Source: Octopus sinensis
Lineage: Eukaryota
Direction: 5' to 3'
NCBI RefSeq assembly: GCF_006345805.1
Contig: NW_021835735.1
Coordinates: 1-40,228 of the forward strand
Length of the DNA: 40,228 nt
How positions within the stretch are numbered: the first letter of the stretch is position 1; every line of letters begins with the position of its first letter. A model generated the notes under the pieces. That model saw only the letters and a list, made by a program, of their open reading frames with translations. It had not been told where the DNA came from and did no database searches. Made by a program: the position numbers and the translations under genes. Shown in pieces: positions 1,460 through 40,228 of this stretch.

Positions 1460-1864
1460 ATTCTTTTACTCTTTTATTCTTTTACTTGTTTCAGTCATTT
1501 GACTGCAGTCATGCTGGAGCACCGCCTTTAGTCGAGCAAATCGACCCCAGGACTTATTCTTTGTAAGCCTAGTACTTATTGTATCTGTCTCGTTAGCCGA
1601 ACTGCTAAGTTACGGGACGTAAACACACCAGCATCGGTTATCAAGCGATGTTGAGAAGAAAAACACACGACACACACTTACATATATAAATACATATATA
1701 CGACGGGCTTCTTTCAGTTTCCGTCTACCAAATCCACTCACAAGGCTTTGGTCGGCCCGAAGCTATAGTAGAAGACACTTGCCCAAGGTACCACGCAGTG
1801 TGACTGAACCCGGAACCATGTGGTTGGTAAGCAAGTTACTTACCACATAGCTACTCCTACGCCT
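1460..1864 (-). mobile_element. tRNA-derived SINE, family A (octopus-type), near full length
   Basis: Reverse complement has a tRNA-like head (A-box-like TAGCTATGTGG, B-box-like GGTTCAGTCAC), an internal (TA)/(TG) tract and a 3' tail GGCGGTGCTCCAGCATGACTGCAGTCAAATGACTGAAACAAGTAAAAG; aligns by eye to copies at 9294, 12022 and 23722. Confidence 0.9.
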
Positions 1865-2300: not shown

Positions 2301-3889
2301 TTTGTAAAATCGTTTTAGAATAGAAAAAAAATCTATCTTTATTTCTTCTTTTGCTGGTGTCTCAAATTTAGGCTAAACTATTGTTTCTCAAAGGGGAGGC
2401 CTATGGGATGGTCGGACAAGTTGTTTTGAGAAAATTTGGTTTAAATCTTTGACAACTCAACGCCGTTCATAGATACATATGTGTGTGTATGTATGTGTAT
2501 GTATACATATATATGTATATGTATACATATGCTTGAGCGGGTCTGTATGTATGTGTGTGTATGTGTGTGTGTGTGAGAGTGTGCATGTTGGCTTGCGTAT
2601 CAAATGATTTGTATATGACCACTTGTGTAATGTATAATAGAGTTTTATATATATATCAATGTAAGCGTATTACTTTGTATATGTGGCAAGAGTAATTGTT
2701 TATATTTATAAATGTATGTTTGTAAGCAAGCCCAATAAAATATTTCTTTTTGACATGTGGATCTTTAGTCTATAATCGTAACACAAAACACTATTACGTT
2801 AGCATGAGAAAGTTTTGGTATCCCAGAATTTTCTATGACAAATTTTACATTGTAGATCTGCTTAACAGATAAACAATTCGGAAGTCAAGAGGAAACGGAG
2901 CAATATGTCTTTCAGGTGGGCTATCCCCTTATGAAACTTAAAACCGTTTTTACAAATTAACAGAAAATCCGCAAATTATATTTCTGCCGTGCAGAATTAA
3001 TGCTAGAAATTGAAGATCGGAGCATATAATTTTTATTTTATATTTCACGATTGTTTGAACGATAGAATGCTTATTCGTCATGCATTTTTCTTGTAAATGT
3101 ATCCAGTGTTAACGACCTAGTTACAAATGCTACCGTCCATGGAAATTCTTTCATCAGAACTTTACATCAAACACAATACGCAGAAACCATCTGGTATTTC
3201 ACTTAAATACGTTTTATTCAACCAACATAGAACTTAATTATTGCAATTCCAAAGTACATGGTATCCTACAACAACAGTATGTGATGTCCTATTATTTCTT
3301 TAGGAAAATGTCATAAAATCCGTGTCCTTTAAACCAAGTGACCATGAAAAAGAAGGTTGCAAATATATTTCCACAAGTCTAAGAAGCAAGAAATAACACC
3401 AATGTGGATACGAAGGATATTATTTCAGTAAACTTTCAGATTATGTGGAACTTTCTCACTGTCTAGACACTTTCTGTAATCGAATGTATTGAGGAGGACA
3501 CATTATACAAAATATGGAAACTTTAGTCGATAATAAGTCAATCGACAAAATCAGTCGGCCGTTATTAAATATATGGTAATAAGAATATGGAAACAAAAAT
3601 ATGATTAAAAAATATAAAAAGTAAAAACAAGTAGAATAGCATTTGATATATGGAAGTTGATTAATGTCTTATTTTAATCAACCAATATTACTGTAATCAA
3701 TTAGGTCTTGTGTTAATTAATCTGGACATTAGCAAGTTTGTTACATTAGAGCATTGATGTAAAATCGTATCTGGGAGACGCGTCAAGTGAAATACATACT
3801 GAATTTTTTGTCTTTTTACGTACGTGTTTAGGAAATCAAGCAGGTATGTACATATGATACTACATACATACATATCTAGTCTCTCTCGC

Positions 3890-3893
3890 CATA

Positions 3894-3960
<67 letters not shown>

Positions 3961-4243
3961 ATATATATATAATATATATATATACATGTATATGTATATA
4001 TATTTGTATGCATATATTATATGTATATGTATATATATTGTATGTATATATATATATATGTATATATTTGTATGTATATATATATATAGTATATATATTG
4101 TATGTAAATATATTATGTATATATATTGTGTATATATATATATATACATGTATATGTATAATATATGTATGTATATATTTATATATTACATGTATACATG
4201 TATATGTATATAATATGTATATATTTGTATGTATATATATTTG

Positions 4244-4279
<36 letters not shown>

Positions 4280-4342
4280 CATGTATATATATATATACAT
4301 GTATATATATATACATGATAATATATATAACAGTATATATAT
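3890..4342. repeat. (CT)n plus compound AT-rich micro/minisatellite
   Basis: (CT)n then (AT)n interrupted by CATG and TTTGTATG motifs, the same vocabulary as 6281-7305. Confidence 0.95.
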
Positions 4343-6206
4343 GAAGACCCTCATCAATAACCAAAGATCAGCTGAGGAGAAGTGGGCCATTGAAAAAATC
4401 AAACTCAACCCCAAAGTGTTCTTTTCATTTGCGAGGAAACGCAGGGTCACTGTCTCCACTGTAGGTCCTCTAATTGACGAAACTGGCACTCTCCAAGATA
4501 ATGCCAAATCCATGGCCGAGATACTGCAGAAACAATACTGCTCTGTTTTCAGCAATCCTGATATGGCCGATCTGGGCTGTATCAGTGATGTCAACCCCCA
4601 ACACACTATATCGGACATAACGTTTAGTGCCCCTGATGTCTTAGCGGCGATAAACGAAATAAAACGCAATTCAGCAGTAGGCCCCGATAGGTTCCCTGCT
4701 TGTGTCCTGAAGGTGTGTCGACACCAACTTGCATCTCCCCTTGATAATCTGTGGAGAAACTCACTGGATGCTGGCTATATTCCAAAAAATCTCCTGTCCC
4801 AGTCTGTTGTCCCAGTTTTCAAAAAGGGAAACAAGTCCCTTGCAGTGAATTACCGTCCGATCTCACTCACCTCTCATATCATCAAGGTATTTGAGAGGGT
4901 GGTGAGATCTCGAATAACCCAATTTCTGGAAAGCAACAGACGGCTGATCTCCAACCAACATGGGTTCCGTAATGGAAGGGACTGCCTAACGCAGCTCCTG
5001 CATCACTTTGAGGACATTTTGAGAGCTTTGGGAGAGGGCTCCAACACCGATGTCATCTCCTTGATTTCAGTAAGGCCTTCGACAGGGTCGATCACAAGAT
5101 CCTATTGAAAAAACTATCCAACATTGGTGTCTCTGGAAAGTTACTGAAATGGATTAAGTGTTTCCTGACAGACAGATCTCAACATGTTGTAGTTGAAGGG
5201 GTAAAATCAAGCCCAGCCAAAGTCAGTAGTGGCGTTCCGCAAGGCACTGTGCTGGGCCCACTTCTTTTCATCATTTACATTAATGACATTAATGACATCA
5301 TCAAGCACAGCAACATAAAAATCTTTGCAGATGACTCCAAGCTACAGAAGGTCATAAATGAGGCGAGTGACCGGACATGCCTTCAGTCAGATCTACTGGC
5401 TGTTATCCAATGGGCAGAAAAAAACAATATGCTGCTGAACGAGGATAAATTTGAGCTAATCCACTTTGGAAAAGAGGATGCCCTGAAACTCCCATACTCC
5501 CTTCCTCCAGGTGAAACTCTCGCGGCGTCCAACAACATCAGAGACTTGGGAGTAATTGTGGACAACAACGTAAGCTGGGCCACTCATATAAACACAAAGT
5601 GGACATGGCCCGCAGAATGTGTTCCTGGATTCTCAGAACTTTCCAGTCGAGAGATATCCACACCATTATCCTTCTCTTCTCCACTTTTGCCCGACCCCAC
5701 CTTGAATACTGTTGTCCACTGTGGTCTCCCCACACAATACAAGGTATCATAAAAGTTGAAGCACCACAAAGGGCAATCACAAAAAAGATAGATGGCATGA
5801 CAGGCCTCGACTATTGGGGTCGACTAGAAAAGCTAAAACTCTATTCTCTCCAACGTCGTCGTGAGCGCTACATCATCTGCATGATGTGGAAAATATTCCA
5901 TCAGCATTGCCCAAATGATGTTGGCATCACCTTTAAGGTACATCCAAGCTTGGGCCCCGTGCCATCCGCCCAAAACAAAAATCGCACTCTCATCTCATAA
6001 CAACAATACGGCACAATTATTTCACCTCAATTGGCCCCGCTCTCTTTAACATTACACCAAAACACATTAAAACAGAAACTGACCCTATAGGGTTCAAGAG
6101 TCTTTGGACAGATTCCTTCAAAATCCCGGATAAACCCCCTACACCCGGATATGTCTCTGTAAACAATAACTCTCTACTTGAGTGGGTCATAGTGCCCAAA
6201 TTCTGA
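4341..6206 (+). pseudogene. LINE ORF2 (reverse transcriptase and C-terminal region), frameshifted
   Basis: Continuous RT protein can be reassembled across 1-bp deletions at about 5059, 5597, 5957, 6098 and 6121, ending ...PGYVSVNNNSLLEWVIVPKF* (TGA 6204-6206); no in-frame stops in the reconstructed frame. Confidence 0.88.
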
Positions 6207-6280
6207 CTTGAAAGACTTCACCAGGTGGTGCTATTAAGTTAGACATGGCCTGGGCCAATAATGGCCGAAACCTATCAAAG
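4343..6280 (+). mobile_element. 5'-truncated CR1-clade non-LTR retrotransposon (LINE)
   Basis: RT-region motifs [85 protein letters not shown]; ends in a short 3' UTR with stem-loop GGCCA-ATAA-TGGCC-GAAAC. No endonuclease domain present. Confidence 0.92.
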
Positions 6281-6543
6281 TATATGTATATATATTTGTA
6301 TGTATATAATATATATATATATATTTATATATATATATATACATGTATATGTATATATATTTGTATGTATATATATTATATATACACATGTATATGTATA
6401 TATATTTGTAAGTATATATATATACATATATATATACATGTATATGTATATATATTTGTACGTATATATATATACATATATATATACATGTATATGTATA
6501 TATATTTGTATGTATATATATATTACATATATATATACATGTA

Positions 6544-6574
<31 letters not shown>

Positions 6575-6607
6575 ATATATATACATGTATATGTATATAT
6601 ATTTGTA

Positions 6608-6639
<32 letters not shown>

Positions 6640-7305
6640 CATGTATATGTATATATCTGTATTTATATATATATATATATGTATATATATTGTATGTATA
6701 TATATATATATTTGTATATATATACATGTATATATATATATATATTTGTATGTATTATCTATATATATATGCATGTATATATATATATATTTGTATATAT
6801 ATACATATATATATATTATTTGATATATATTTGTATATATATACATATATATATATATATATTTGTATGTATATATGTATATATGTTCATGTATATATAT
6901 TATATATATATATATTTGTATGTATATATATATATATATATTTATGTATATATGTATAATATACATGTATATATATATATCTGTATGTATGTATATATAT
7001 ATATATATGTATGTATATATATATATATATTTCTATGTATATATATATACATGTATATATATATTATTGTATATATATGCATGTATATATATATGTGTAT
7101 GTATGTATGTATATATATATATATATATGTATATACATGTATATGTATATATATTTGTATGTATATATATATATATTTATGTACATGCATATGTATGTCT
7201 ATATATAAATGTATATATGTACAAATATATATATATACACAACCTCTTATATATATATTTATATACACACATATATCTAAATATCTCTCTCTATATATAT
7301 ATACA
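6281..7305. repeat. AT-rich higher-order minisatellite (~50-bp unit) decaying to (AT)n
   Basis: CATG recurs at 6387, 6437, 6487, 6538 and 6586 within the unit CATGTATATGTATATATATTTGTANGTATATATATATACATATATATATA. Confidence 0.92.
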
Positions 7306-7863
7306 TCATCTGACAAACGGAAGGAATGCAACTAAATAAATAAAACTCAGTATACCTTTGATTTTATTATTTGTAGCTAAGAAGATGTGTTCGTGACACC
7401 TCAGCGTAGAGTTTCTTGGAAACTTTCGTATTTCACAAACGGCAAGTTTTTGAACCTATCATATATATACGGTGATAAAATTAGAAATAACTCCAGTATA
7501 AGAGAAACATTTTAATTCTCTCATTATAGTTCTGTATTTCGGTAGACAATTGGATATGTATAAATGTTAACAAAGCGTACGCATTTATATTACCATTAAA
7601 AATTAGAGATACATATATTCATTCTATATTACATCAGCTTCATATAAAATCTACAACACTTGAGGAATTAATCAGACATGATTATTCAGTAGAGTGTGGT
7701 TCTCAGTGAAATGTGAATGAAATGAAATAATATTAAAAGAAACTTCTGAACGATTTTAAACGTATAAGGATATCTTCAATTTAAGTCTGTTATCTTACAA
7801 TGAGAAAATACATACCACTCAACGTATCAGTAATATGTAGTTGTATGTTCAACACACCTATGA

Positions 7864-8038
7864 ATTATATATATATACATACCTATATATATATATATAT
7901 CTATATATATATATATATGTATGCATATATTATATATATATATATATATAATATATATATATGTATGCATATATATAATATATATATAATATATATATAT
8001 ATATGTGCATATATATATATATATATATATGTTGCATA

Positions 8039-8076
<38 letters not shown>

Positions 8077-8102
8077 CATATATATATATATGTATGCATA
8101 TC

Positions 8103-8135
<33 letters not shown>

Positions 8136-8157
8136 CATATATAGATATATATATGTA

Positions 8158-8193
<36 letters not shown>

Positions 8194-8194
8194 C

Positions 8195-8230
<36 letters not shown>

Positions 8231-8285
8231 CTATATGCATATATTATTTATTATATATGCATACATATATATATATATATATATG

Positions 8286-8324
<39 letters not shown>

Positions 8325-8343
8325 TACATATATATATGTATAC

Positions 8344-8379
<36 letters not shown>

Positions 8380-8390
8380 CATATACATAC

Positions 8391-8460
<70 letters not shown>
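7864..8460. repeat. (AT)n microsatellite interrupted by GTATGCAT motifs
   Basis: Direct reading of the sequence. Confidence 0.95.
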
Positions 8461-8463
<3 letters not shown>

Positions 8464-8884
8464 TAAATGTAAGCATAAGCAAGTTAGGCAAGTCGATGCA
8501 CAAAAAATATTGAATAAATTTAATATAATAAATGTACCTATGTTTACATATAGTCATGTCCGACTTACACAAAATAAAAATGATATCAAGAAAGAAAGGG
8601 GTTGATTAAGAGTTTTCCGAGGCCGTCAACTGATACTGGGGGCTTGGTGGTCCCAAATAATAATTGTAAATTGGTTCAATCAGCTGATAATTTTTTACTT
8701 TCTTCCCCATAATATTTGAATCACTCTTTATAATTCTTTAATATACTTTATTCTTTAATATACTCAAAATTCTCTTGCCGTGTTGCTGCCTAGAGAAATT
8801 GTCTTTCATAAATTATGCAAGAGTCTCAAAATAAGCAATATTCAATCAAAATTACTTTCGTTTAATAATAATAATAATAATAAT

Positions 8885-9270: not shown

Positions 9271-9293
9271 ACCATATATATATATATATATAT

Positions 9294-9678
9294 AGGTGCA
9301 GGGGTGGCTGTGTGGTAAGTAGCTTGCTAACCAACCACATGCTTCCGGGTTCAGTCCAACTGCGTGGCATCTTGGGCAAGTGTCTTCTGCTATAGCCCCG
9401 GGCCGACTAATGCCTTGTGAGTGGATTTGGTAAACGGAAACTGAGAGAAGCCTGTCGTATATATGTATATATGTGTATGTGTGTCTGTGTTTGTCCCCCT
9501 AGCATTGCTTGAGAACCGATGCTGGTGTGTTTGCGTCCCCGTCACTTAGCGGTTCGGCAAAAGTGACCGATAGAATAAGTACTGGGCTTACAAAGAATAA
9601 GTGCCGGGTTGATTTTCTCGACTGAAGGCAGTGCTCCAGCATGGCCGCAGTCAAATGACTTAAACAAGTAAAAGAGTA
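9294..9678 (+). mobile_element. tRNA-derived SINE, family A
   Basis: Head AGGTGCAGGGGTGGCTGTGTGG...GGGTTCAGTCC; tail GTGCTCCAGCATGGCCGCAGTCAAATGACTTAAACAAGTAAAAGAG. Confidence 0.9.
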
Positions 9679-10049
9679 TATAAGATTCAGTTGAGTTAGG
9701 TACTTAAATTGAGGCACCTTGCTAGGTCGATCTAATTTGCACACCCAAATCATATCACGTGAATATGAAATTTTTTGCAGAAGTATTTGCATCTGATCTT
9801 CTTGCTGTCCATACATACATACACATATAAGTATGCATGCATGTGAATATAAATGCTTATACAAAATAAAATAGAGACGTGCATATACATTTATACACCG
9901 CATACGCAATTGTATAGTTACGTGTATATGCGAAAACAGGTCATCTAAATCAGAGTGGGTCGACTAGAATCTATTTGTTTTTTTTAAAATATATTTAAGA
10001 CTTCATTGCATCAGAAAACGCGTTCATAACTAATGTGTAGTTTGGCATT

Positions 10050-11975: not shown

Positions 11976-12021
11976 GCATACATGTACTGAAGACACTGCG
12001 ATTAAAAAGAATTCTTCTTTA

Positions 12022-12415
12022 ACTTTTTTACTTATTTCAGTCATTTGACTGCGGCCACGCTGAAGCACCGCCTTTTAGTCGAGCAAATCGACCCTTTGTA
12101 AGCCTAGTACTTATTCTATCGGTCTCTTTTGCAGAACCGCTAAGTGACGGGGACGTAAACACACCAGCATCGGTTGTCAAGCGATGTTGGGGGGAGAAAC
12201 ACAGACACACAAACACATACACACACATACATATTTATATATACATATATACGATGGGCTTCTTTCAGTTTCCGTCTATCAAAACCACTCACAAGGCTTT
12301 TGTCGGCCCGAGGCTATAGTAGAAGAAACGTGCCCAAGGTGCCACGCAGTGGTATTGAACTCGGAACCATGTGGTTCGTAAGCCAGCTACTTATCACACA
12401 GCCACTCCTACGCCT
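12022..12415 (-). mobile_element. tRNA-derived SINE, family A
   Basis: Reverse-complement match to 9294-9678 and 23722-24124; short internal deletion near 12095. Confidence 0.9.
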
Positions 12416-12707
12416 ATATGCGTTGTCAGTTTTAATTTGAACCTCTAATGTGCGTAGCTGCATTCACTCTTCTATTACTTATTGGCGTCTTCTTTTGAAT
12501 AAAGTTATGCTATTGGCGCTATATGTTTTGCAACATGCACAAAGCCACGGTGGGCATAATGTTGTACCTAATTATTTCATTATCGTCGTATTAATATTGT
12601 TGTATTTAGGAATGGTCATTTTGCCAGTTTAACCAATAAAAACATATATATTTGGTGTTACTTTGCTTCAGCGTTATTCATTTTTTTCATTAATCTTAAT
12701 CTTATTT

Positions 12708-12753
12708 CGGCCAGAGTTCTTTCGTCACACTCCTGTGACCTCATCAGTGGTCC
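12708..12753 (-). ncRNA. Type I hammerhead ribozyme motif, intact core, minimal stem III
   Basis: Minus strand reads GGACCA CTGATGA G GTCAC aggagt GTGAC GAAA G aa C T C TGGCCG: perfect 5-bp stem II, stem I CCA/TGG, cleavage triplet CUC. Confidence 0.72.
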
Positions 12754-13441
12754 TTTACTTTCTTCTTTCTTATTTGTGTGTCTCTCCTTACTAACGGTCA
12801 GCCATGTTGTATTTTGTATTCCTAGTGTATGTGTCTTCATTTGCGCATGCGTATACCTCTATGTGTGTCTATGTCTAGTTAGTGTGTGTGTGCGTGTGTG
12901 GGGAAGAAATGCCTGTAATATTTGTATCTTCTGTTTATATACATAAGCCCTAGCCAGGCTAGCAAGACGAAATCTTGCAAGACAAATATATAAACGTATT
13001 AATATTATGTAACAGAAAACATCTGGTTTCTTTCATAATTTTTGCCACTGTGTTGCACTTCTTCTGTGAGATTTGTGTTTCAGTTTACTATTTATAAATC
13101 ATATACAGTAATAATGGCATTTATAAACATTTGTATAGAGAATATTGTGTTTCGAAAGAGTCTTTCTTATCTAGTCGTGTGTGATTCGTGTTTTGTTTAT
13201 TTACCTATTGTAAATGCATGACCAAATGAATAAAAGTTGTCTTATGCTTGTGTCCGACAAAGCGGTTGATGTAACAATGTTTACAACTTTTATATTTAGA
13301 CGGAAATTTTATATTGCACATTTGTCATAACAAAGTTCAGTGCCTGATTTGATGCCAATGAGAAGTTTATTTCTCAATCGTATTACTTTTAATTAGTATT
13401 TTGTGGTAAGTTATGATATGTATTTCTTTATTGCTTACAGT

Positions 13442-13957
13442 GTGCTAAACATAAAGGGGACAAACAAGGACGGACAAAGGGTTTATGTCTATAACACCGA
13501 CTCCAGTGCGTAACTGGTACTTAATTTATCGTCCTGGAATGGATGAAAGGCAAAGTCAACCTCGGCGGAATTTGAACTCAGAACGTAACAGCAGACGAAA
13601 TAACTATTTCTTTACTACCCACAAGGGGCTACACGCAGAGGGGACAAACAAGGACAGGCAAACGGATTAAGTCGATTATATTGACCTCAGTACGTAACTG
13701 GTACTTATTTAATCGACCCCGAAAGGATGAAAGGCAAAGTCGACCTTGGCGGAATTTGAACTCAGAACGTAACAGCAGACGAAATACCTATTTCTTTACT
13801 CCCCACAAGGGGCTACACACAGAGGTGACAAGCAAGGACAGACAAACGGATTAAATCGATTATATCGACCCCAGTGCGTAAGTGGTACTTAATTTATCGA
13901 CCCCGAAAGGATGAAAGGCAAAGTCGACCTCGGCGGATTTCGAACTCAGAACGTAAC
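13442..13957 (-). repeat. Tandem array (~2.8 x 184 bp) of SINE family B internal units
   Basis: GAACTCAGAACGTAAC recurs at 13574, 13758 and 13942 (period 184); unit is the reverse complement of the repeat in 17665-18068. Confidence 0.9.
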
Positions 13958-14774
13958 AAGCTGTTCAGTTTGTATCCAGTTTGTTTAATATTTTACCTAC
14001 TTTTTTCCATTATATAACAGTAATACAAACACTATATCTATCCTTAGCTGAAATGTTTCTATTTTGTTATAACTTACGAATTAGTGTGAGGAATGTATAA
14101 TATATTCTTCAGACAAATTTTTTGTTATGATTCTGTGCTTTTGTTTAACTATTCAACACCTTGGTTTGCTTGTTTATGTACTGATAGACCTACGGGTGTT
14201 ATTCTCTTTATGAGCCACTATGGTGCTATCGATGCATATGTGTTTAAACTTTATTTTTATATACTGAAAAGATAATAGATCTTGTCAGTGAGTTTAAGGC
14301 CGCAAGTCATTGTGCTCTCTTTTCGCTCCTGGGTATTGTCTTACCTAATTTTGTAACATTTTCTGTCCACATAACATGTTGTTTTCATATAATTTATTTT
14401 CATTCTTAATGACTAGTTCATTGCACAAAAAATGGGCTTTTAAATGTTACAGCTCATTCCGTGATTTTCAAATCTTCACTTTGTTTTTACTTTTTTTGCT
14501 GAAATTATATATCTCTTGTTTCCACATGTGAATGCGTCTCGTACATTACCGCTTCATAAAACAGAATTCGAATTCTACCTATTTAAATTTGAATGTTTTA
14601 TTTCCTGCCCTGGCTTGTAGCTAAGATCGAAAAGCAAAGTGCCTGTCCTACTCAATTGCCAACCAAAATCAATCTTACTCTAAAATCATATATCAAATAT
14701 ATATTACATTATGTACAAAATTAAGACTTTTTAAACATTAGAACTATAAAGAAGCTGTCAGCTATGGTAACTCT

Positions 14775-15129: not shown

Positions 15130-16490
15130 ACCATGTTCTCCTACCACAACATCTCCTTTATAGGATCCAGTTAGCTCAGACATCATCTGGAGGAACCACG
15201 TCCGGTTTCGCTCCCTACTCCTCTACTGTTTTGACGTGGCGGGGCCCCCCTTTCGGAGGTGTCTTCAGCTCTGGTGTTGGGTGCATGTCTTCTTTCTTCT
15301 TTCTTCTGTTCCCTGGCCTTTTCTATGTAGCGTCAGCGGGTCTCAGCGAGCGACTCACTGACTTGTCAACTGTTTTCCCTTTAAACACCTGCTGCAATGC
15401 TCTAGCAGGCAGCCCCAGAACGTTGTCACGTGACACTGTCTCAACTTTAACTGACCAATGAAGGCGCGTAGTTTTAGCCCACGCATTCTCTAAACGAGAC
15501 CGTCGCCGGTCAATCAGCGAAGCTAATTCAGTGTCAGCTTGTCTCACCTACTGATGTTATTTTCCTGCCAGCGTGTTATGACTTTCAAGCCATTTTTGGT
15601 CTTCCCGCTTCAGCCATATATAGAAGCCTCCTGTAATCTCCTTATTAATTTTCTCAGCTCCGTGCTAGAAAAAAAAAGAAAACTTCATATGAATAGCGTT
15701 GTCATTTTTCTCTCAATGAAGCCCCTAGCCCCCACTGCCAGGTGGTAATACCCGACATTCCATCCCTGTTCACTGCACTCTTCGATTAGATTTCCGTACA
15801 TCTTCTCCTTTCGCTTCTCTGCGTTGTCGATATTCTCTTCCCATGGCACTGTCAGTTCTAGCAAAATTCCTATTCTCCGTTCTCTGTCCCATAGGACTAA
15901 ATCTGGTCTTTTTGTGGTTTTCATGAGTGGAAATATTACTAGTCTTTCCAAATCCGTAACCAGCTCACAGTATCCCTTCCATCTTTTGTCTATCTCGTAT
16001 ATTTTATTTGTAGGCCTGGTCTTATGGCCTTTTCCCTCCTTCTGGAAGTATACATTCCTACGCTTTTCCACTTTTGGGTACTCTCCCATATTGTATCCCT
16101 CGATCTTCTCCTTGAGCGCTGCGCTTATGACGCCGAGGACATGATTATGACGCCATGTGTACCTTTCTAGTGCTAGTCTGCAGTTTGACAGAACATGTCT
16201 AACCGTCGCTTTCTCTCCGCATCTACATTCACCAGTTATTTTTATGTTCCACCGGACTAGGTTCGCCGGTGAGGGTAGAACGTCGAAGGTAGACTTGATC
16301 AGGAAGGATGTTCTTGCTTGTTCCCAAGCCCAACGTTCCTTCCATGATATTCTGCGACTGATCACATATTCCTCCTATCTCAGGCACTGTCCCTGTTGAC
16401 TACATTGCACCAAATGTACATTTCGCCTTTCTTCTTCCCCCTTTCTCACTTCGTGTACCACTGCCTCTTTCATCTCTTTTATACTGCTCT
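15130..16490 (-). mobile_element. 5'-truncated HERO/R2-group non-LTR retrotransposon (zinc knuckle plus restriction-like endonuclease and 3' UTR)
   Basis: Translation EAVVHEVRKGEEERR..VQCSQQG, FLIKSTFDVLPSPANLVRW, CRCGEKATVRHVLSNC (CCHC), RYTWRHNHVL, KRPDLVLWD...ILLELTVPWEE..AEKRK (PD..D/ExK REL), VGARGF, then IWLKREDQKW. One stop near 16372 and a frameshift near 15680. The 3' boundary is approximate. Confidence 0.85.
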
Positions 16491-17660: not shown

Positions 17661-17664
17661 AGAA

Positions 17665-18068
17665 GGCGGCGTGCTGGCAGAAAGGTTAGCACGCCGGGCG
17701 AAATGCTTAGCCGTATTTCGTCTGCTGTTGCGTTCTGAGTTCAAATTCCGCCGAGGTCGACTTTACCTTTCATCCTTTCGGAGTCGATAAATTAAGTACC
17801 AATTACGCACTGGGATCGATATAATCGACTTAATCCGTTTGTCTGTCCTTCTTTGTCCCCTCTGTGTTTAGTCACTTGTGGGTAGTAAAGAAATAGGTAT
17901 TTCGTCTACCGTTACGTTCTGAGTTCAAATTCAGCTGAGGTCGACTTTGCCGTTTATCCTTTCGGGGTCTATTAAATAAGTGCCTATTACGCACTGAGGT
18001 CGATATAATCAACTTTTGTCTGTCCTCTCTGTGTTTAGCCCCTTGTGGGTAGTAAAAAAATAGGTATT
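17665..18068 (+). mobile_element. tRNA-derived SINE family B with head plus two 184-bp tandem units
   Basis: A-box-like TGGCAGAAAGG, B-box-like GAGTTCAAATTCC; TTCTGAGTTCAAATT at 17733 and 17917 (period 184). Confidence 0.85.
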
Positions 18069-18200
18069 TATTTTATCGGCACTGAAAGAATGAAAAGCAA
18101 AATCCAAGTGAGCAGGAATTGAACTTGCAACGTAAAGACTGACGTAATGCTGCCAGCCATATGTCCTGGCGTGCTACCGTTTTCGCCAAGTCTCCGTCTT
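18068..18200 (-). mobile_element. Old SINE family B 5' fragment
   Basis: Diverged reverse-complement match to the head and B box (GGAATTGAACTTGCAACGTAAAGAC...GGCGTGCTACCGTTTTCGCCAAG). Confidence 0.55.
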
Positions 18201-18625: not shown

Positions 18626-19429
18626 TAACACTAAGTATAATATTAAGTAGAATATTTAAATCTGATGATTATTAAATCCATAACTGGTGGGGTCTTTGTG
18701 TCTACAAATTTTACTTACTCCCGTTATATCGAGCGTTGTTTAAATTTTTATATTCACTAAGAATATATATTAGCAAAATGTAAGTACTGATGACTCGGGG
18801 ACGACTTTGGCTTGGTAACATGCGCTTTGTTTTCGTTAAATGTGTAGTGGCCTATGTCATCACCAGCCTCTCTCACAGTTGACAACTCAATTTTCTGAAT
18901 GAGACAGCAGGAGTGATAGAGAACCTCATTTGCAGCTGATTAGTACTCCTTACAAATGAGAAAACAGGGGCAACGATAACTGAAGTACCGTGCTCAGTGC
19001 ATGATTTGGATCTGTGATTAAAATTATGATATTATGACCATGAGCTGAGCAGCGTTACCAGAAGTCCACTGCTTTCACTAGAAAGGATATTGTTTTAAAT
19101 TTTCTAATGGCTAACATAAGCATTTAAAAAATTTACTTTTGTCCTGTGAGTTGAGAGAGATCTAATAGGATTTATTGCGCCTACGAAATACGTATTAGCC
19201 ATATTTTACTTAATTACTTTCCTCTAACTTGTTAACCGTCGTTATTTAGCTCATTTAAAAGCATAGTGCTATATATTTCAGTAAAGTAATTTAGGAAATA
19301 GAGATAAGACAAAAGAAAAGAAGTGTTTGTAAATATTCGCTCGATCTAGCATAATGTTTTAAATGTAAAGGCGTAGAGGAGAACAAGCATGAGGGCGCAT
19401 AAGAAATAAAGGAAACTATATGAATACAC

Positions 19430-20284
19430 ATACACACACCACACACAAACATAAACACACGCAAACAAACACACCCACACACGCACAAAGACATAAGCCC
19501 TGCCACACGCAAACACACACACACACAAATATATACATATGCTTACATATGTTTCTGTGAGTGTATGGGTGTGTATGTGTACGCGCATGTACAAAGGCAC
19601 GCACACACACACACTCACACACACACATATATATTAATGGAGAGGAAAATAATGGGAAAGAGTGAGAAAGTACAAGAACAGCTTATTATAAGAAGCGAAT
19701 TATTCATTGCTAAACAGCTTGATAGTTTTATAGCGTATGGATAGTTATATGGCATGAGAAAGTAAAAAGACCAGCAAGGAGAGAAAAACAACATTTGGGA
19801 TTATAAAAAGAAACTATCGATTCATTGCTAATGAGTTTTATATTGTAGGGATCGTTATATATCAAAAAGAATAATGAGAAGAAACAATGGAAAGTAGTTT
19901 TTGATTCATTGCTAATGAATTTGCGAGTTATATAACGTAGGGATCATTATAGATTAAAAATGTATAAATTACCAGACAGAGAGAATATCTGTTGATTCAT
20001 TGCTAATGAGTTTAAGAATATTATAGCGCATGGATTTTGATAATTAGGCATTTAAGAACGGATTACAACCACAATGATGTAGTTTGTAGAATAACCGATT
20101 TAAAGATGTGTTGGAGTAGGAAAAATCCTTAATTTCATAGTTAATTAATGAAGCAATTTATCATACAATTCGACTTTAAATTAATCAATATTTCCTTTAC
20201 ATATGAAAATATGAGAACAAAAATAAGAATAAAGATGACCTCGTTTATAAATAGTCTCTCGTCGCCCGAGAAAGAAAGAGGAAC

Positions 20285-20318
<34 letters not shown>

Positions 20319-20553
20319 CTGAGAGGAGGAGGGAGAGATGGAGAGAGAAAGAGAAAACTAAGAACAGAACATTTATTAATTTTGTTCTATATTATTATAT
20401 ACAGATTCGATTGAATTTTGTGAACATTAACGTCATTGCTTACAGACAAATGACAGATTCACATAATTAAACACTCTAAGAGTATAATTCGGGTATACGA
20501 AACGTTTGACGTTTCACATACGTTATTGTTCGATACTCATCTGCAAACGTCAA

Positions 20554-20584
<31 letters not shown>

Positions 20585-21422
20585 CACACACACACACACA
20601 CACACCACACACACACACACACACACACCACACACAAACATAACACACGCAAACAACACACACACACACAATATATACATATGCTTACATATGTTTCTGT
20701 GAGTGTATGGGTGTGTATGTGTACGCGCATGTACAAAGGCACGCACACACACACACTCACACACACACATATATATTAATGGAGAGGAAAATAATGGGAA
20801 AGAGTGAGAAAGTACAAGAACAGCTTATTATAAGAAGCGAATTATTCATTGCTAAACGCTTGATAGTTTTATAGCGTATGGATAGTTATATGGCATGAGA
20901 AAGTAAAAAGACCAGCAAGGAGAAAAACAACATTTGGGATTATAAAAAGAAACTATCGATTCATTGCTAATGAGTTTTATATTGTAGGGATCGTATATAT
21001 CAAAAAGAATAATGAGAAGAAACAATGGAAAGTAGTTTTTGATTCATTGCTAATGAATTTGCGAGTTATATAACGTAGGGATCATTATAGATTAAAAATG
21101 TATAAATTACCAGACAGAGAGAATATCTGTTGATTCATTGCTAATGAGTTTAAGAATATTATAGCGCATGGATTTTGATAATTAGGCATTTAAGAACGGA
21201 TTACAACCACAATGATGTAGTTTGTAGAATAACCGATTTAAAGATGTGTTGGAGTAGGAAAAATCCTTAATTTCATAGTTAATTAATGAAGCAATTTATC
21301 ATACAATTCGACTTTAAATTAATCAATATTTCCTTTACATATGAAAATATGAGAACAAAAATAAGAATAAAGATGACCTCGTTTATAAATAGTCTCTCGT
21401 CGCCCGAGAAAGAAAGAGGAAC

Positions 21423-21456
<34 letters not shown>

Positions 21457-21688
21457 CTGAGAGGAGGAGGAGAGATGGAGAGAAAGAGAAAACTAAGAAC
21501 AGAACATTTATTAATTTTGTTCTATATTATTATATACAGATTCGATTGAATTTTGTGAACATTAACGTCATTGCTTACAGACAAATGACAGATTCACATA
21601 ATTAAACACTCTAAGAGTATAATTCGGGTATACGAAACGTTTGACGTTTCACATACGTTATTGTTCGATACTCATCTGCAAACGTCAA

Positions 21689-21730
<42 letters not shown>
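19430..21730. repeat. Near-identical ~1.14-kb tandem duplication with junctions in (CA)n tracts
   Basis: GCTTACATATG at 19541 and 20683 (offset 1142); AAACGTCAAC at 20545 and 21680 (offset 1135); the copies differ mainly by short deletions in copy 2. Confidence 0.95.
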
Positions 21731-23721: not shown

Positions 23722-23868
23722 TTGCAGGAGTGGCTGTGTGGTAAGTAGCTTGCTTACAAACCACATGGTTCCGGGTTCAGTCCCACTACATGGCACCTTG
23801 GGCAAATGTCTTCTACTACTCCTCGGGCTGACCAAACTGAAAGACGCCCGTCGTATATATATTATATA

Positions 23869-23932
<64 letters not shown>

Positions 23933-24124
23933 TTGTGTGTCTGTGTTTGTGCCACTCAACATCGCTTGACAACCGATGCTGGTATGTTTACGTCCCTGTA
24001 ACTTAGCGGTCCAGCAAAAGAGACTGATAGAATAAGTCCTGCGGTCGATTTGCTCGACTGAGAGTCGGTGCTCCAGCATGGCCGCAGTCAAATGACTGAA
24101 ACAAGTAAAAGAGTAAAAAGAGTA
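23722..24124 (+). mobile_element. tRNA-derived SINE, family A
   Basis: Head GCAGGAGTGGCTGTGTGGTAAG...GGGTTCAGTCCC; expanded (TA)n(TG)n middle; tail CATGGCCGCAGTCAAATGACTGAAACAAGTAAAAGAGTAAAAAGAG. Confidence 0.9.
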
Positions 24125-25092
24125 ATGGAATCATCAGAGACGGAAACATAGATAAAGAGAAAAGAGAGAAGAAAAAACTCTAAACAGAAATGCGTATAGA
24201 CAAGCAGTTCACATATTTGTAAATCATTATCATGATTTGTGAATGAAAATAGTTTGCAAACGTCATGATTGAGTGTCGAATTTGAGTAACAGTAGACAAT
24301 AATAAAATAAACACTGGACAATGAAGAGAGAGCAGTAGAAAAACAAAAGCGAAGAGATGGAAGAGATAGAGAAGAGGAGAGAAATGATAAGCAAAGTATA
24401 AAGGAGAGAAAAATATTCATGTAGGTAAGTGACAGGCGTCCGTTATATAAAGAAAGACTGGGGTAAGAGAATTTCAAGTGTGTAGAGTAGTAGCAGAGGA
24501 ATAAAAGCCAACGATGGGAAAGATGAGGCAGCAGCGAAGGAAACAGCAAAATATCAATTAGGTGCTTCTAGAGGAGAAAAGATAAGACAACGATAGGCAG
24601 ATTGAGATCGAGAAAACTCAACAACATCACGGTGGAAGGGAAATAGAAAAAAATAATAAAGTTGACGTTTAAAGTTTTAGAGTGTTTATTAAAAGAAATA
24701 GGGAGGATAAAGCTAAAAGGGAAAATCAGAGATATAAAAAAAGAGAGATAAGAAGACAAAAGGGAAAATACGTAGTGGGGAGAGCGATAGATAAAAGATA
24801 GTAACTGGAAAATGAAAACGATTTAATGAGAAGCTGGAGGAAATACACAGCTAAACGTTATCAATTCAGCACGTTTTTGGTAAAAGAATAACAGGCTATG
24901 GCTACAAAAAATAAGAGATTGAGAAATTTGACTTCCAGGAGGAATAGGACGAGATACTTAAAGAAATTCATTACAGATCAGATAGGGAAGGATCGCCATA
25001 AACACATATATATAGTATTCATCCAATATAAGTGCATGTGTAAGTGTTTATATAAGTGTGTATTATATGATATATATGTATACAAACACACA

Positions 25093-25522: not shown

Positions 25523-25777
25523 TATAGTATATAGAGGATACTACTATTCATAGATACCGCACTATTCATAGATACCGATTGTTGCACTGATGAGCATAGA
25601 ATGCATATTCTGCATGAATTGCGAAATCACAGGTGATATGTAACTAAATTCTTTTTTTAAATGTCTTGCTTTGAAGTTTTGCATTCGGTACAATTTTGTT
25701 TATTTTAGTAGTTTTGACCGCAAGGGTCCCTCCTAGCGTGCGGTATCTATGAATAGTAGTACCCTCTATATAATATA
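25523..25777. mobile_element. 255-bp element bounded by 40-bp inverted repeats and containing a hammerhead ribozyme
   Basis: Left arm 25523-25562 TATAGTATATAGAGGATACTACTATTCATAGATACCGCAC matches the reverse complement of 25738-25777 at 38/40; a 17-bp piece of the arm (25543-25559) is duplicated at 25561-25577. Confidence 0.75.
25581..25644 (+). ncRNA. Type I hammerhead ribozyme, complete (core and stems I, II, III)
   Basis: GTTGCA CTGATGA GCA-(internal loop)-ATGCA tattc TGCAT-(loop)-TGC GAA ATCA cagg TGAT A TGTAAC. Stem I is 6 bp (one G-U), G10.1-C11.1 is kept, stem III is 4 bp with a tetraloop, cleavage triplet AUA (predicted cut between 25638 and 25639). Confidence 0.8.
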
Positions 25778-26269
25778 AATATATATGTATATATATTTAT
25801 ATATGTACGCAACCGCACACACATTCACAAACAAATATGCATAATAATATAGTTTCGTTCAATTTTTTCAAACCATATTTTCGTATATTTCTCACTCTTG
25901 TAGACGTGTAAATACTTCTTTCTAATAAAATCTGAAGAGGCGAAAAACCTGTAAGTGTGAGGAGAAGATGTAGTGTTAACAATCAACAAACACCTTACCA
26001 GATCAGATATTTTCTTACAGGCAAACTGTCTACAAATGTATCTATCCACGTGTCTAGCTATCTCTGTTTCTATTTACCTCATTATCAAACTCTGTATCTC
26101 TCTTGTCATATACCTATACACTCACAAACGCACACACACTCACACACACACGCACGCACACACACAGTCACACACATACACACGCATCTGTCGTGTATTA
26201 TAGGTAACACCCAGAGAAAGGTGCTTCTTTCCCACTCACTAAAGTGAATGGAGAATTGCCCAGGAGAAA

Positions 26270-39110: not shown

Positions 39111-39363
39111 TATCAAACAGTACTAACATGATAAATGATCAAGATTTAGTAACTTTCAAAACTGTCAGTAATATCCTGCACAATAAGAAAGGCATAACTT
39201 CCCAGGATCGGGGCACTATTTATGACTCACCCTATACAGAAGATTTTGAAAGGATCGGCACTAAACTTTGGCGTAGATAATTATACCAGTCCCAGAACTG
39301 GATCATGTACTGCAATGGCTTGGAATGCAAACGCCCAGAGCTATTTAATATCTTGTAAGAGAT

Positions 39364-39365
<2 letters not shown>

Positions 39366-39414
<49 letters not shown>

Positions 39415-39760
39415 ATCCTGCTGCTGCTACTACTAGTGCTACTGCTGCTTCTGTTGCTACTACCACTACTACTACTACTACTGCTGCTGCTGCTACAACT
39501 ACTACAAATCCTGCTGCTGCTGCTGCTGCTATTACTAGTGCTACTGCTGCTGCTGTTGCTATTACTACCACTACTGCTGCTACTACTACTAATCCTGCTG
39601 TTGCTACTACTAGTACTACTGCTGCTGCTACTACTACTACTGCTACTACTACTACTACTACTATCACCACTATCCAACCACTGACTAAGCGTTACCGCTG
39701 CTTTTTGTGAGACTGACAAGGCCAGGACTACGGCACCACTACCGTTGCTGCTACTACTAC
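39366..39760. repeat. (ACT)n/(GCT)n trinucleotide compound repeat with recurring AATCCTGCTG
   Basis: Direct reading of the sequence. Confidence 0.95.
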
Positions 39761-40228
39761 TAGACACTCCTTTATATCAACAATGTCTGTAAGGAACAGA
39801 AGACAACTGCTTCAAATAAAACTTTTACTTCTACTATTACGACCCAATTGCCACCAGGAGAGAGAAACAACCAGCCTTATGTGAATTTTGTAAAGAAAAA
39901 CCATTCAAATATATAAAATTGATAACATGAAAATTTTATTAAATATTTTCAGTTTAATTCATTTTCTTCTACAGCATGATTGAATTGACTTAAATCAATT
40001 GAAACCAGTAGACTGTTTTCACAAAAATTGAAATATTCCCTTTTTTTTATCAAGATATTTTATCAAAGTATTTTCTTCTGTTATTTTTGTGCTATATATA
40101 TTTACTCGAACACACACAAAAAAAACATACATAATATATATATATATATATAATATATATATATATAATATATATCTATATATAAATATATATATATATA
40201 ATATACACGTATATGGGAGGATGTATTC

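What the first reader, a model, noticed from the sequence alone, without database searches (positions are those of the whole stretch)
25523..25777. Complete hammerhead ribozyme inside a 255-bp mini-element with 40-bp inverted termini
Seen in sequence: 25581-25644 satisfies every canonical type I HHR position (C3U4G5A6U7G8A9, G10.1-C11.1, G12A13A14, A15.1-U16.1, H17=A). It has a 6-bp stem I, a 4-bp tetraloop-capped stem III and an extended stem II. It starts about 20 bp inside a 38/40 inverted repeat, and a 17-bp piece of the arm is locally duplicated. Established: type I HHRs occur in Penelope-like pLTRs and in retrozymes, but animal versions are often minimal with a vestigial stem III, and Penelope insertions leave inverted partial pLTRs. 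Inference: this is a non-coding, self-cleaving mobile unit able to cut as a monomer, either a truncated Penelope end or a distinct ribozyme-carrying fold-back mini-element whose transcript forms a long hairpin with the HHR in the loop. An alternative stem II fold (25594-25613) could act as a switch or inactivate it.
Basis: partly seen in the sequence, partly recalled or inferred. Interest (0 to 1): 0.85.

Follow-up and report, generated by a model that had tools for sequence, protein, structure and literature searches.

The report
Orphan hammerhead motif in octopus mini-element
A 255-bp non-coding element with 40-bp inverted ends in an octopus-like genome carries a sequence that matches every consensus position of a self-cutting hammerhead RNA, but I could find nothing beyond that match to show it is an evolved ribozyme rather than a lucky one.

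Summary
25581-25644(+) fits the full type I hammerhead consensus: helix I has 6 bp, helix II has 3 bp, a 4x4 internal loop and 5 more bp, and helix III has 4 bp with a tetraloop. Predicted cleavage is at 25638/25639. The motif lies 19 nt inside a 38/40 inverted repeat (25523-25562 / 25738-25777) whose left arm holds an 18-bp tandem duplication.

The interpretation stays open.
- No Rfam hammerhead model scores it, even at E<=10 on 84 nt.
- The nearest-neighbour model puts about 0.1% of molecules in the hammerhead fold, because the core pairs with helix III.
- It is not tandemly repeated, and no Penelope-like ORF lies in the window.
- No other copy could be reached. The window is octopod, and the searchable collections hold no octopus repeats.

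In a 30.7-Gb null, equally good helices arise at 6.3e-9 per base. That is about 5e-4 per window and tens per octopus genome, or about 1-4 per genome if G10.1-C11.1 and fold competence are also required.

My best reading (0.5) is a real MITE-like or fold-back element with a fortuitous, at most weakly active, hammerhead match. The main rival (0.3) is a truncated Penelope/retrozyme unit joined to a short inverted partner. A BLAST against the source genome would decide.

The parts
25523..25562 (+). Left terminal inverted repeat arm (38/40 with the right arm). A TA at 25523-25524 could be a target-site duplicate rather than part of the arm.
   Evidence: (I1)
25543..25578 (+). 18-bp tandem duplication (ACTATTCATAGATACCGC x2; the last base of the second unit differs). 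It straddles the inner end of the left arm. The right arm has one copy only.
   Evidence: (D2, I14)
25581..25586 (+). Hammerhead helix I, 5' strand (GUUGCA)
25587..25593 (+). Core C3-A9 (CUGAUGA). In the predicted MFE fold it pairs with 25627-25632 instead.
25594..25622 (+). Extended helix II: 3 bp, a 4x4 internal loop, 5 bp and a 5-nt loop. GCAU recurs every 9 nt.
   Evidence: pair probabilities 0.86-0.99
25623..25625 (+). Core G12 A13 A14
25626..25637 (+). Helix III (A15.1-U16.1 plus 3 bp, loop CAGG). Predicted pair probability is <=0.006 without tertiary terms.
25638..25638 (+). H17 = A. The predicted scissile bond is 25638/25639.
   Evidence: hammerhead numbering from established knowledge
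25639..25644 (+). Helix I, 3' strand (UGUAAC)
25645..25737 (+). Unique AT-rich interior with no recognisable feature. It includes a T7 run at 25652-25658 and a small GACC/GGUC hairpin near 25716-25728.
25738..25777 (+). Right terminal inverted repeat arm. A TA at 25776-25777 could be a target-site duplicate.

Best explanation
A short, non-coding element bounded by terminal inverted repeats (MITE-like or fold-back, about 251-255 bp) sits in TA-rich microsatellite DNA of an octopod genome.

Inferred mechanism: it was mobilised as DNA by a transposase supplied in trans that recognises the roughly 40-bp termini. The ends can be read as TA|TAGTATATAGAGG...CCTCTATATAATA|TA, which would fit a Tc1/mariner-type TA target. 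Later the left arm gained an 18-bp slippage duplication.

Any read-through transcript would fold into a roughly 40-bp hairpin with a 175-nt loop.

The hammerhead match in that loop is complete at the level of the minimal consensus. It might therefore support slow, Mg-dependent cleavage at 25638/25639 in vitro. It is most likely a fortuitous match, not maintained by selection and not needed for the element's movement.

Shown: the inverted repeat, the duplication, the consensus match, the absence of coding capacity, and the octopod origin. Inferred: DNA-level mobility, the TA target, and the fortuitous nature of the motif.
For: - The inverted termini are highly significant, and the element folds as a hairpin with z = -8.8.
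- The window is octopod and repeat-rich. The LINE RT has its best hits in Octopus sinensis and Argonauta hians, and the window shares repeat families with O. sinensis at 76-91%.
- Tc1-Mariner is the largest TIR superfamily in O. vulgaris, and MITEs are annotated there (PMC13282606).
- No Rfam hammerhead model scores the motif, even at E<=10 on 84 nt.
- The hammerhead fold is -10.9 kcal/mol against an MFE of -14.3. It takes 1e-3 of the ensemble (8e-6 in loop context).
- Helix II has only 3 contiguous bp and spans 29 nt, which is typical of chance descriptor hits. Canonical metazoan hammerheads have a 4-bp helix II and a 1-2-bp helix III (PMC4209133).
- A single hammerhead cannot release a unit-length RNA. 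Published surveys discard motifs that cannot be grouped into families or tandem arrays (PMC4209133, PMC7229834).
- The null gives about 34 equally good helices per 2.7 Gb.
Against: - Per window the chance rate is low: 5e-4. It falls to 2e-5 to 6e-5 if G10.1-C11.1 and a fold gap <=4.3 kcal/mol are also required.
- The candidate is more fold-competent than about 96% of the chance hits with the same helix lengths.
- Every core position is intact, including the preferred U7 and G10.1-C11.1.
- Octopus genomes carry many Penelope-like elements, and these normally carry hammerheads. Real hammerheads should therefore be common in this genome.
- The Rfam miss may only reflect the 29-nt helix II insertion.
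- The TA target-site duplication cannot be told from the TA-rich background.
- No second copy has been seen, so mobility is unproven.
Confidence: 0.5

Rival explanations
1. The hammerhead is genuine and inherited from a retroelement. About 25563/25579-25777 would be a 5'-truncated monomer of a Penelope-like pLTR or of a Penelope-mobilised non-LTR retrozyme. The 40-bp left arm would be a very short inverted, 5'-truncated partner copy laid down in the same integration event, so that the two 3' ends face outward. The ribozyme would originally have processed multimeric or read-through transcripts of the family.
For: - Penelope-like insertions often carry an adjacent inverted 5'-truncated copy and 30-40-bp tails. 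Some clades prefer microsatellite, including (TA)n, targets (PMC8557442). The element abuts a (TA)n-like tract at 25767-25804.
- Most Penelope hammerheads occur as single motifs in truncated copies, sometimes as pairs on opposite strands (PMC4209133).
- Octopus genomes have many Penelope families.
- The arm divergence of 2/40 implies a fairly young event, which would explain an intact core.
- The chance rate per window is low, and the fold competence is above most chance hits.
- A second motif of the Penelope minimal type may lie at 12709-12753(-).
Against: - No RT/GIY-YIG remnant is present anywhere in the window.
- The helix geometry is unlike metazoan Penelope minimal hammerheads, which have a 1-2-bp palindromic helix III and a 6-8-bp helix II with a bulged base.
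- There is no tandem arrangement as in retrozymes (PMC7229834).
- No Rfam hit.
- The hammerhead fold is disfavoured.
- No family member was retrieved.
Confidence: 0.3
2. A new kind of element: a fold-back or MITE family bounded by inverted repeats, of which the hammerhead is an integral and conserved part. The ribozyme would cut the hairpin transcript once in its loop, for example to shape a small-RNA precursor or to end read-through transcripts.
For: - The complete core lies 19 nt inside the arm.
- The helices are better than about 96% of chance matches of the same helix lengths.
- The long hairpin leaves the ribozyme in the loop.
- No paper in the searched library describes a hammerhead inside a MITE, so it would be unrecognised rather than excluded.
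Against: - There is no precedent and no evident benefit of RNA cleavage to an element that moves as DNA.
- Only a single copy is known.
- In the loop context the hammerhead fold is predicted at about 1e-5 of the ensemble.
- All the evidence against a selected ribozyme listed under the best explanation applies here too.
Confidence: 0.1
3. The inverted repeat is a local rearrangement, such as a replication fold-back or a template switch, and not a mobile element at all. The hammerhead match would be fortuitous.
For: - No second copy exists in the window or in any reachable collection.
- An 18-bp slippage duplication lies at the inner edge of the left arm.
- The microsatellite-rich context is prone to replication errors.
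Against: - The 175 bp of unique spacer and the clean 40-bp arms ending in TA-rich DNA look more like an insertion.
- Local fold-backs usually have short spacers.
Confidence: 0.1

Closest known systems
Canonical metazoan type I hammerhead ribozymes (Rfam RF00163; Schistosoma Sm-alpha, newt satellite 2, non-LTR retrozymes of corals, mussels and axolotl)
   Same: Type I topology, all conserved core nucleotides, a 6-bp helix I, G10.1-C11.1, an AT-rich host repeat of about 250 bp, and non-coding.
   Different: - It is not scored by the Rfam model.
- Helix II is 3 bp plus an internal loop plus 5 bp, instead of 4 bp plus a loop.
- Helix III is 4 bp instead of 1-2 bp with a palindromic loop.
- The cleavage triplet is AUA instead of the usual GUC.
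- No loop 1/loop 2 contacts are recognisable.
- It is solitary rather than tandem (PMC7229834, PMC4209133).
Minimal hammerheads of Penelope-like element pLTRs
   Same: They occur mostly as single motifs in truncated copies, sometimes with inverted partner copies. Penelope-like elements are present in octopus and insert near microsatellites.
   Different: The Penelope minimal motifs have almost no helix III, a 6-8-bp helix II with a bulged 5' base, and a 4-5-bp helix I. No Penelope ORF or pLTR is identifiable here.
MITEs / Tc1-mariner-derived (Stowaway-like) miniature inverted-repeat elements
   Same: About 250 bp, roughly 40-bp terminal inverted repeats, AT-rich, non-coding, a possible TA target duplication, and a hairpin-forming transcript.
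   Different: Copy number and an autonomous partner are unknown. The target-site duplication is ambiguous. To my knowledge and in the searched library, MITEs are not known to carry ribozymes.
HDV-like ribozymes at the 5' ends of non-LTR retrotransposons (R2, RTE, L1Tc)
   Same: A self-cleaving RNA embedded near one end of a mobile element, which could trim co-transcripts.
   Different: The ribozyme class is different. Those ribozymes cleave at their own 5' edge, so the ribozyme stays with the element RNA. A type I hammerhead here would leave most of itself on the upstream fragment.

Membership tests
Hammerhead ribozyme, type I | Conserved core: C3 U4 G5 A6 N7 G8 A9, G12 A13 A14, A15.1-U16.1, H17 not G | tested here: met
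   Read; descriptor scan
Hammerhead ribozyme, type I | Three helices around the core, with helix I open and helices II and III closed | tested here: met
   Helices of 6 / 3(+5) / 4 bp
Hammerhead ribozyme, type I | Score at or above the threshold of a curated covariance model (Rfam clan of hammerhead families) | tested here: not met
   No hammerhead family at the gathering score, nor at E<=10 on 501 nt or 84 nt. The miss may be caused by the 29-nt helix II.
Hammerhead ribozyme, type I | The active fold is thermodynamically accessible | tested here: inconclusive
   1e-3 of the ensemble, with a gap of 4.2 kcal/mol. Tertiary energy is not modelled.
Hammerhead ribozyme, type I | Helix I / helix II tertiary contacts | not testable with these tools
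   Unpaired nucleotides exist at compatible distances: the helix II internal loop and the flanks of helix I. No conserved loop motif could be checked.
Hammerhead ribozyme, type I | Conservation and covariation in homologues | not testable with these tools
   No homologue was reachable.
Hammerhead ribozyme, type I | Site-specific self-cleavage | not testable with these tools
   Needs a bench assay.
Penelope-like element (pLTR hammerhead) | The motif lies in a direct repeat flanking an RT + GIY-YIG ORF, or in a recognisable fragment of one | tested here: not met
   The only RT in the window is an APE-type LINE at 3858-5997. No GIY-YIG or Penelope RT motifs were found. Similarity to an octopus pLTR consensus could not be tested.
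Penelope-like element (pLTR hammerhead) | Minimal architecture: helix III 0-2 bp with a palindromic loop, and a long helix II with a bulged 5' base | tested here: not met
   Helix III has 4 bp and helix II has no bulged 5' base (compared with PMC4209133).
Non-LTR retrozyme | Head-to-tail repeats of about 170-400 bp, each with a type I hammerhead | tested here: not met
   Single unit. No tandem repeat beyond the 18-bp duplication. Monomers exist in known families, so this does not exclude descent from one.
Non-LTR retrozyme | Expressed as small circular RNA | not testable with these tools
   No transcriptome access.
MITE (non-autonomous TIR DNA transposon) | Terminal inverted repeats bounding a short non-coding unit | tested here: met
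   38/40 arms, 255 bp, and no ORF with relatives.
MITE (non-autonomous TIR DNA transposon) | Target-site duplication | tested here: inconclusive
   TA at 25523-25524 and at 25776-25777 fits, but the flanks are TA-rich. No 3-bp, 4-bp (TTAA) or 8-bp duplication was found by inspection.
MITE (non-autonomous TIR DNA transposon) | Multiple dispersed copies, and termini shared with an autonomous element | not testable with these tools
   No other copy in the window or in 20 kb of O. sinensis. No transposase in the window.

The most novel reading that the evidence does not exclude
The hammerhead is a conserved, functional part of an octopus repeat family bounded by inverted termini. That would make this the first ribozyme-carrying fold-back or MITE-like element, or a new inverted-tail form of Penelope-mobilised retrozyme. 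It would cut as a monomer thanks to a stable helix III and an extended helix II.
Probability: 0.12. Interest if true: 0.7.

Novelty: new member of a known kind. Interest (0 to 1): 0.35.

Why it matters
If the motif proved conserved across copies, it would extend hammerhead-bearing mobile elements to cephalopods and to an inverted-repeat architecture not described for ribozymes. It would also give a monomer-active animal hammerhead with an unusual helix II.

If it is fortuitous, as I think slightly more likely, it is a useful calibration. A consensus-complete hammerhead with 6/3/4-bp helices is expected tens of times by chance in an AT-rich genome of gigabase size. Orphan motifs therefore need family, covariation or cleavage evidence before they are believed.

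Tried and rejected
- Rfam at the gathering threshold on the whole window, and at E<=10 on 501 nt and 84 nt, gave only weak snoRNA and miRNA look-alikes driven by UGAUGA and TA-rich sequence. I rejected these as chance.
- A C/D-box snoRNA reading is rejected: there is no box D (CUGA) or terminal stem (by inspection).
- No tRNA-derived SINE: ARAGORN found nothing.
- Exact scans with the 17-nt arm sequence in metagenome, viral and prokaryotic genome contigs returned 63 loci. All matches are only 17-24 nt long, so they are chance.
- Reaching other copies through translated ORFs of the element failed. The 45-aa frame over the hammerhead has no word-sharing protein. The 43-aa frame over the right arm has no hit among 1.84 billion representatives. 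Exact look-ups were not on record.
- 20 kb of O. sinensis fetched through the LINE hit contains no copy.
- The supplements of two papers hold no matching sequence.
- I looked for Penelope RT/GIY-YIG motifs and for any transposase in all long stop-free frames and found none.
- I considered a memory-based Penelope consensus query for the last protein search and dropped it. Octopus hits would be unlikely among the best 120, and the query itself would rest on recall.

Full report
**Context.** The window is AT-rich (about 35% GC) and full of microsatellites and interspersed repeats. Its only clear coding remnant is a frameshifted APE-type LINE reverse transcriptase at 3858-5997. The best relatives of that RT are annotated in Octopus sinensis (71% identity) and Argonauta hians. 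A 20-kb O. sinensis locus fetched through that hit shares several repeat families with the window at 76-91% identity. The window is therefore octopod nuclear DNA, either intergenic or intronic.

**Observation.**
- 25581-25644(+) reads GUUGCA-CUGAUGA-[29-nt helix II]-GAA-AUCACAGGUGAU-A-UGUAAC.
- My own type I descriptor required CUGANGA, helix II of at least 3 bp, GAAA, an A15.1-U16.1-closed helix III, H17 not G, and helix I. It finds this site and no other on either strand.
- Helix I has 6 bp with one G.U.
- Helix II has G-C, C-G and A-U, then a 4x4 internal loop, then a 5-bp helix with a pentaloop.
- Helix III has 4 bp with a CAGG loop.
- Cleavage would fall between A25638 and U25639.
- The motif begins 19 nt inside the left arm of a 38/40 inverted repeat, 25523-25562 / 25738-25777.
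- The left arm carries an exact 18-bp tandem duplication at 25543-25577.
- As RNA the whole unit folds into a long hairpin (-86 kcal/mol, z = -8.8).

**Is the motif more than chance?**
- Within this window, yes. No dinucleotide shuffle out of 300 gave helices of at least 5/3/3 bp.
- I then built a null of 30.7 Gb from random 10-mers of the window, with the element excluded. Helices of at least 6/3/4 bp arise at 6.3e-9 per base (193 hits). A third-order Markov null gave the same order of magnitude.
- This corresponds to about 5e-4 per 40-kb window, but about 34 per octopus-sized genome. I assume about 2.7 Gb from general knowledge.
- Requiring G10.1-C11.1 as well gives 6.8e-10 per base, about 4 per genome.
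- Requiring in addition that the hammerhead fold lie within 4.3 kcal/mol of the free ensemble gives 2.3e-10 per base, about 1 per genome.
- The match is therefore unusual for one window but not beyond what an AT-rich gigabase genome produces by chance.

**Independent tests of ribozyme identity.**
- No Rfam hammerhead family matches. This holds at the gathering score on the whole window, at E<=10 on 501 nt, and on 84 nt, where the threshold is about 12.5 bits. The 29-nt helix II may account for the miss, so this is weak negative evidence.
- Thermodynamically the hammerhead fold (-10.9 kcal/mol) is not the MFE (-14.3 kcal/mol). In the MFE the core CUGAUGA (25587-25593) pairs with UCACAG (25627-25632), which abolishes helix III.
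- The three-helix junction takes 1e-3 of the ensemble in the 64-mer and 8e-6 in the 175-nt loop.
- A laboratory Schistosoma-type hammerhead gave 0.78.
- On the other side, the candidate's gap of 4.2 kcal/mol is better than about 96% of chance hits with the same helix lengths (8 of 193 at or below 4.3).

**Comparison with known hammerhead-bearing elements.**
- According to PMC4209133, canonical metazoan type I hammerheads have a 6-bp helix I, a 4-bp helix II with conserved loop contacts, and a 1-2-bp helix III with a palindromic loop.
- The minimal hammerheads of Penelope-like elements have a 6-8-bp helix II with a bulged 5' base and almost no helix III.
- Motifs that cannot be grouped into families were discarded in that survey.
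- PMC7229834 describes animal retrozymes as tandem repeats of 170-400 bp and accepts hits only with tertiary contacts and a tandem context.
- The candidate shares the core and helix I length with these. It differs in helices II and III, uses an AUA triplet, is solitary, and has no Penelope ORF within 40 kb.
- PMC8557442 notes that Penelope-like insertions often carry an inverted 5'-truncated partner and 30-40-bp tails, and that some clades target (TA)n.
- Octopus genomes carry many Penelope families, and also many Tc1-mariner elements and MITEs (PMC13282606).
- Both a MITE reading and a truncated Penelope/retrozyme reading are therefore anatomically possible. The (TA)-rich flank at 25767-25804 fits either one.

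**The decisive comparison could not be made.**
- No other copy exists in the window or in the 20 kb of O. sinensis.
- The DNA collections that can be scanned are prokaryotic, viral or metagenomic, and gave only chance matches of 17-24 nt.
- The protein collections hold no ORF calls from octopus repeats. Translated frames of the element found nothing.
- No paper in the searched library reports hammerheads in octopus or in MITEs.

**Verdict.**
- The element with inverted termini is real, and the hammerhead consensus match is real and complete.
- Whether it is an evolved ribozyme cannot be settled here.
- For a real ribozyme: the low per-window chance rate, the intact core and the above-average fold competence.
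- Against it: the Rfam miss, the non-canonical helices, the competing core/helix III pairing, the lack of any family, tandem or Penelope context, and the expected number of chance matches genome-wide.
- I put about 0.5 on a MITE-like or fold-back element with a fortuitous motif.
- I put 0.3 on a truncated Penelope/retrozyme unit with an inverted partner.
- I put 0.1 on a truly new ribozyme-bearing family bounded by inverted repeats.
- I put 0.1 on a non-mobile local fold-back.
- A single BLAST against the source genome, followed by a covariation count and a cleavage assay, would resolve it.

Noticed in passing
window 12709-12753 (- strand): A second hammerhead-like motif: GGaCCA-CUGAUGA-g-GUCAC(AGGAGU)GUGAC-GAAA-GAAC-U-C-UGGCC. 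[quoted passage not shown] PMC4209133 lists these traits for the minimal hammerheads of Penelope-like elements. The relaxed motif has a high chance rate, and no Penelope ORF lies nearby.
   Followed up: partly
window 19426-21729: A tandem duplication of about 1.17 kb at 97.6% identity (19426-20595 against 20571-21729), rich in CA/TG microsatellite.
   Followed up: no
window 1470-1864, 9290-9685(-), 12013-12419, 23726-24125(-); L064 1592-1970: Four copies of a SINE-like repeat of about 400 bp at 78-86% identity. It is also present in the O. sinensis locus.
   Followed up: no
window 13421-13958 and 17663-18069 (inverted); L064 16742-17577: Short arrays of a tandem repeat with a period of about 180-300 bp, in opposite orientations 4 kb apart. 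The same family forms an array in O. sinensis.
   Followed up: no
window 3858-5997(+) and 15688-16374(-): A frameshifted APE-type LINE reverse transcriptase (RVT_1 split over two ORFs), partly overlapped by a TA/TACA microsatellite. A separate weak zf-RVT remnant lies on the other strand.
   Followed up: partly
window 6200-8600 and 39200-39780: A very long TA/TATACA-type microsatellite block, and a trinucleotide repeat that produces homopolymeric L/S/A/V reading frames.
   Followed up: no
window 25594-25622: Helix II of the candidate shows GCAU recurring every 9 nt (GCAUAGAAU GCAUAUUCU GCAUGAAUU GC). This hints that its length and self-complementarity may come from small local duplications. 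TRF did not call it.
   Followed up: partly
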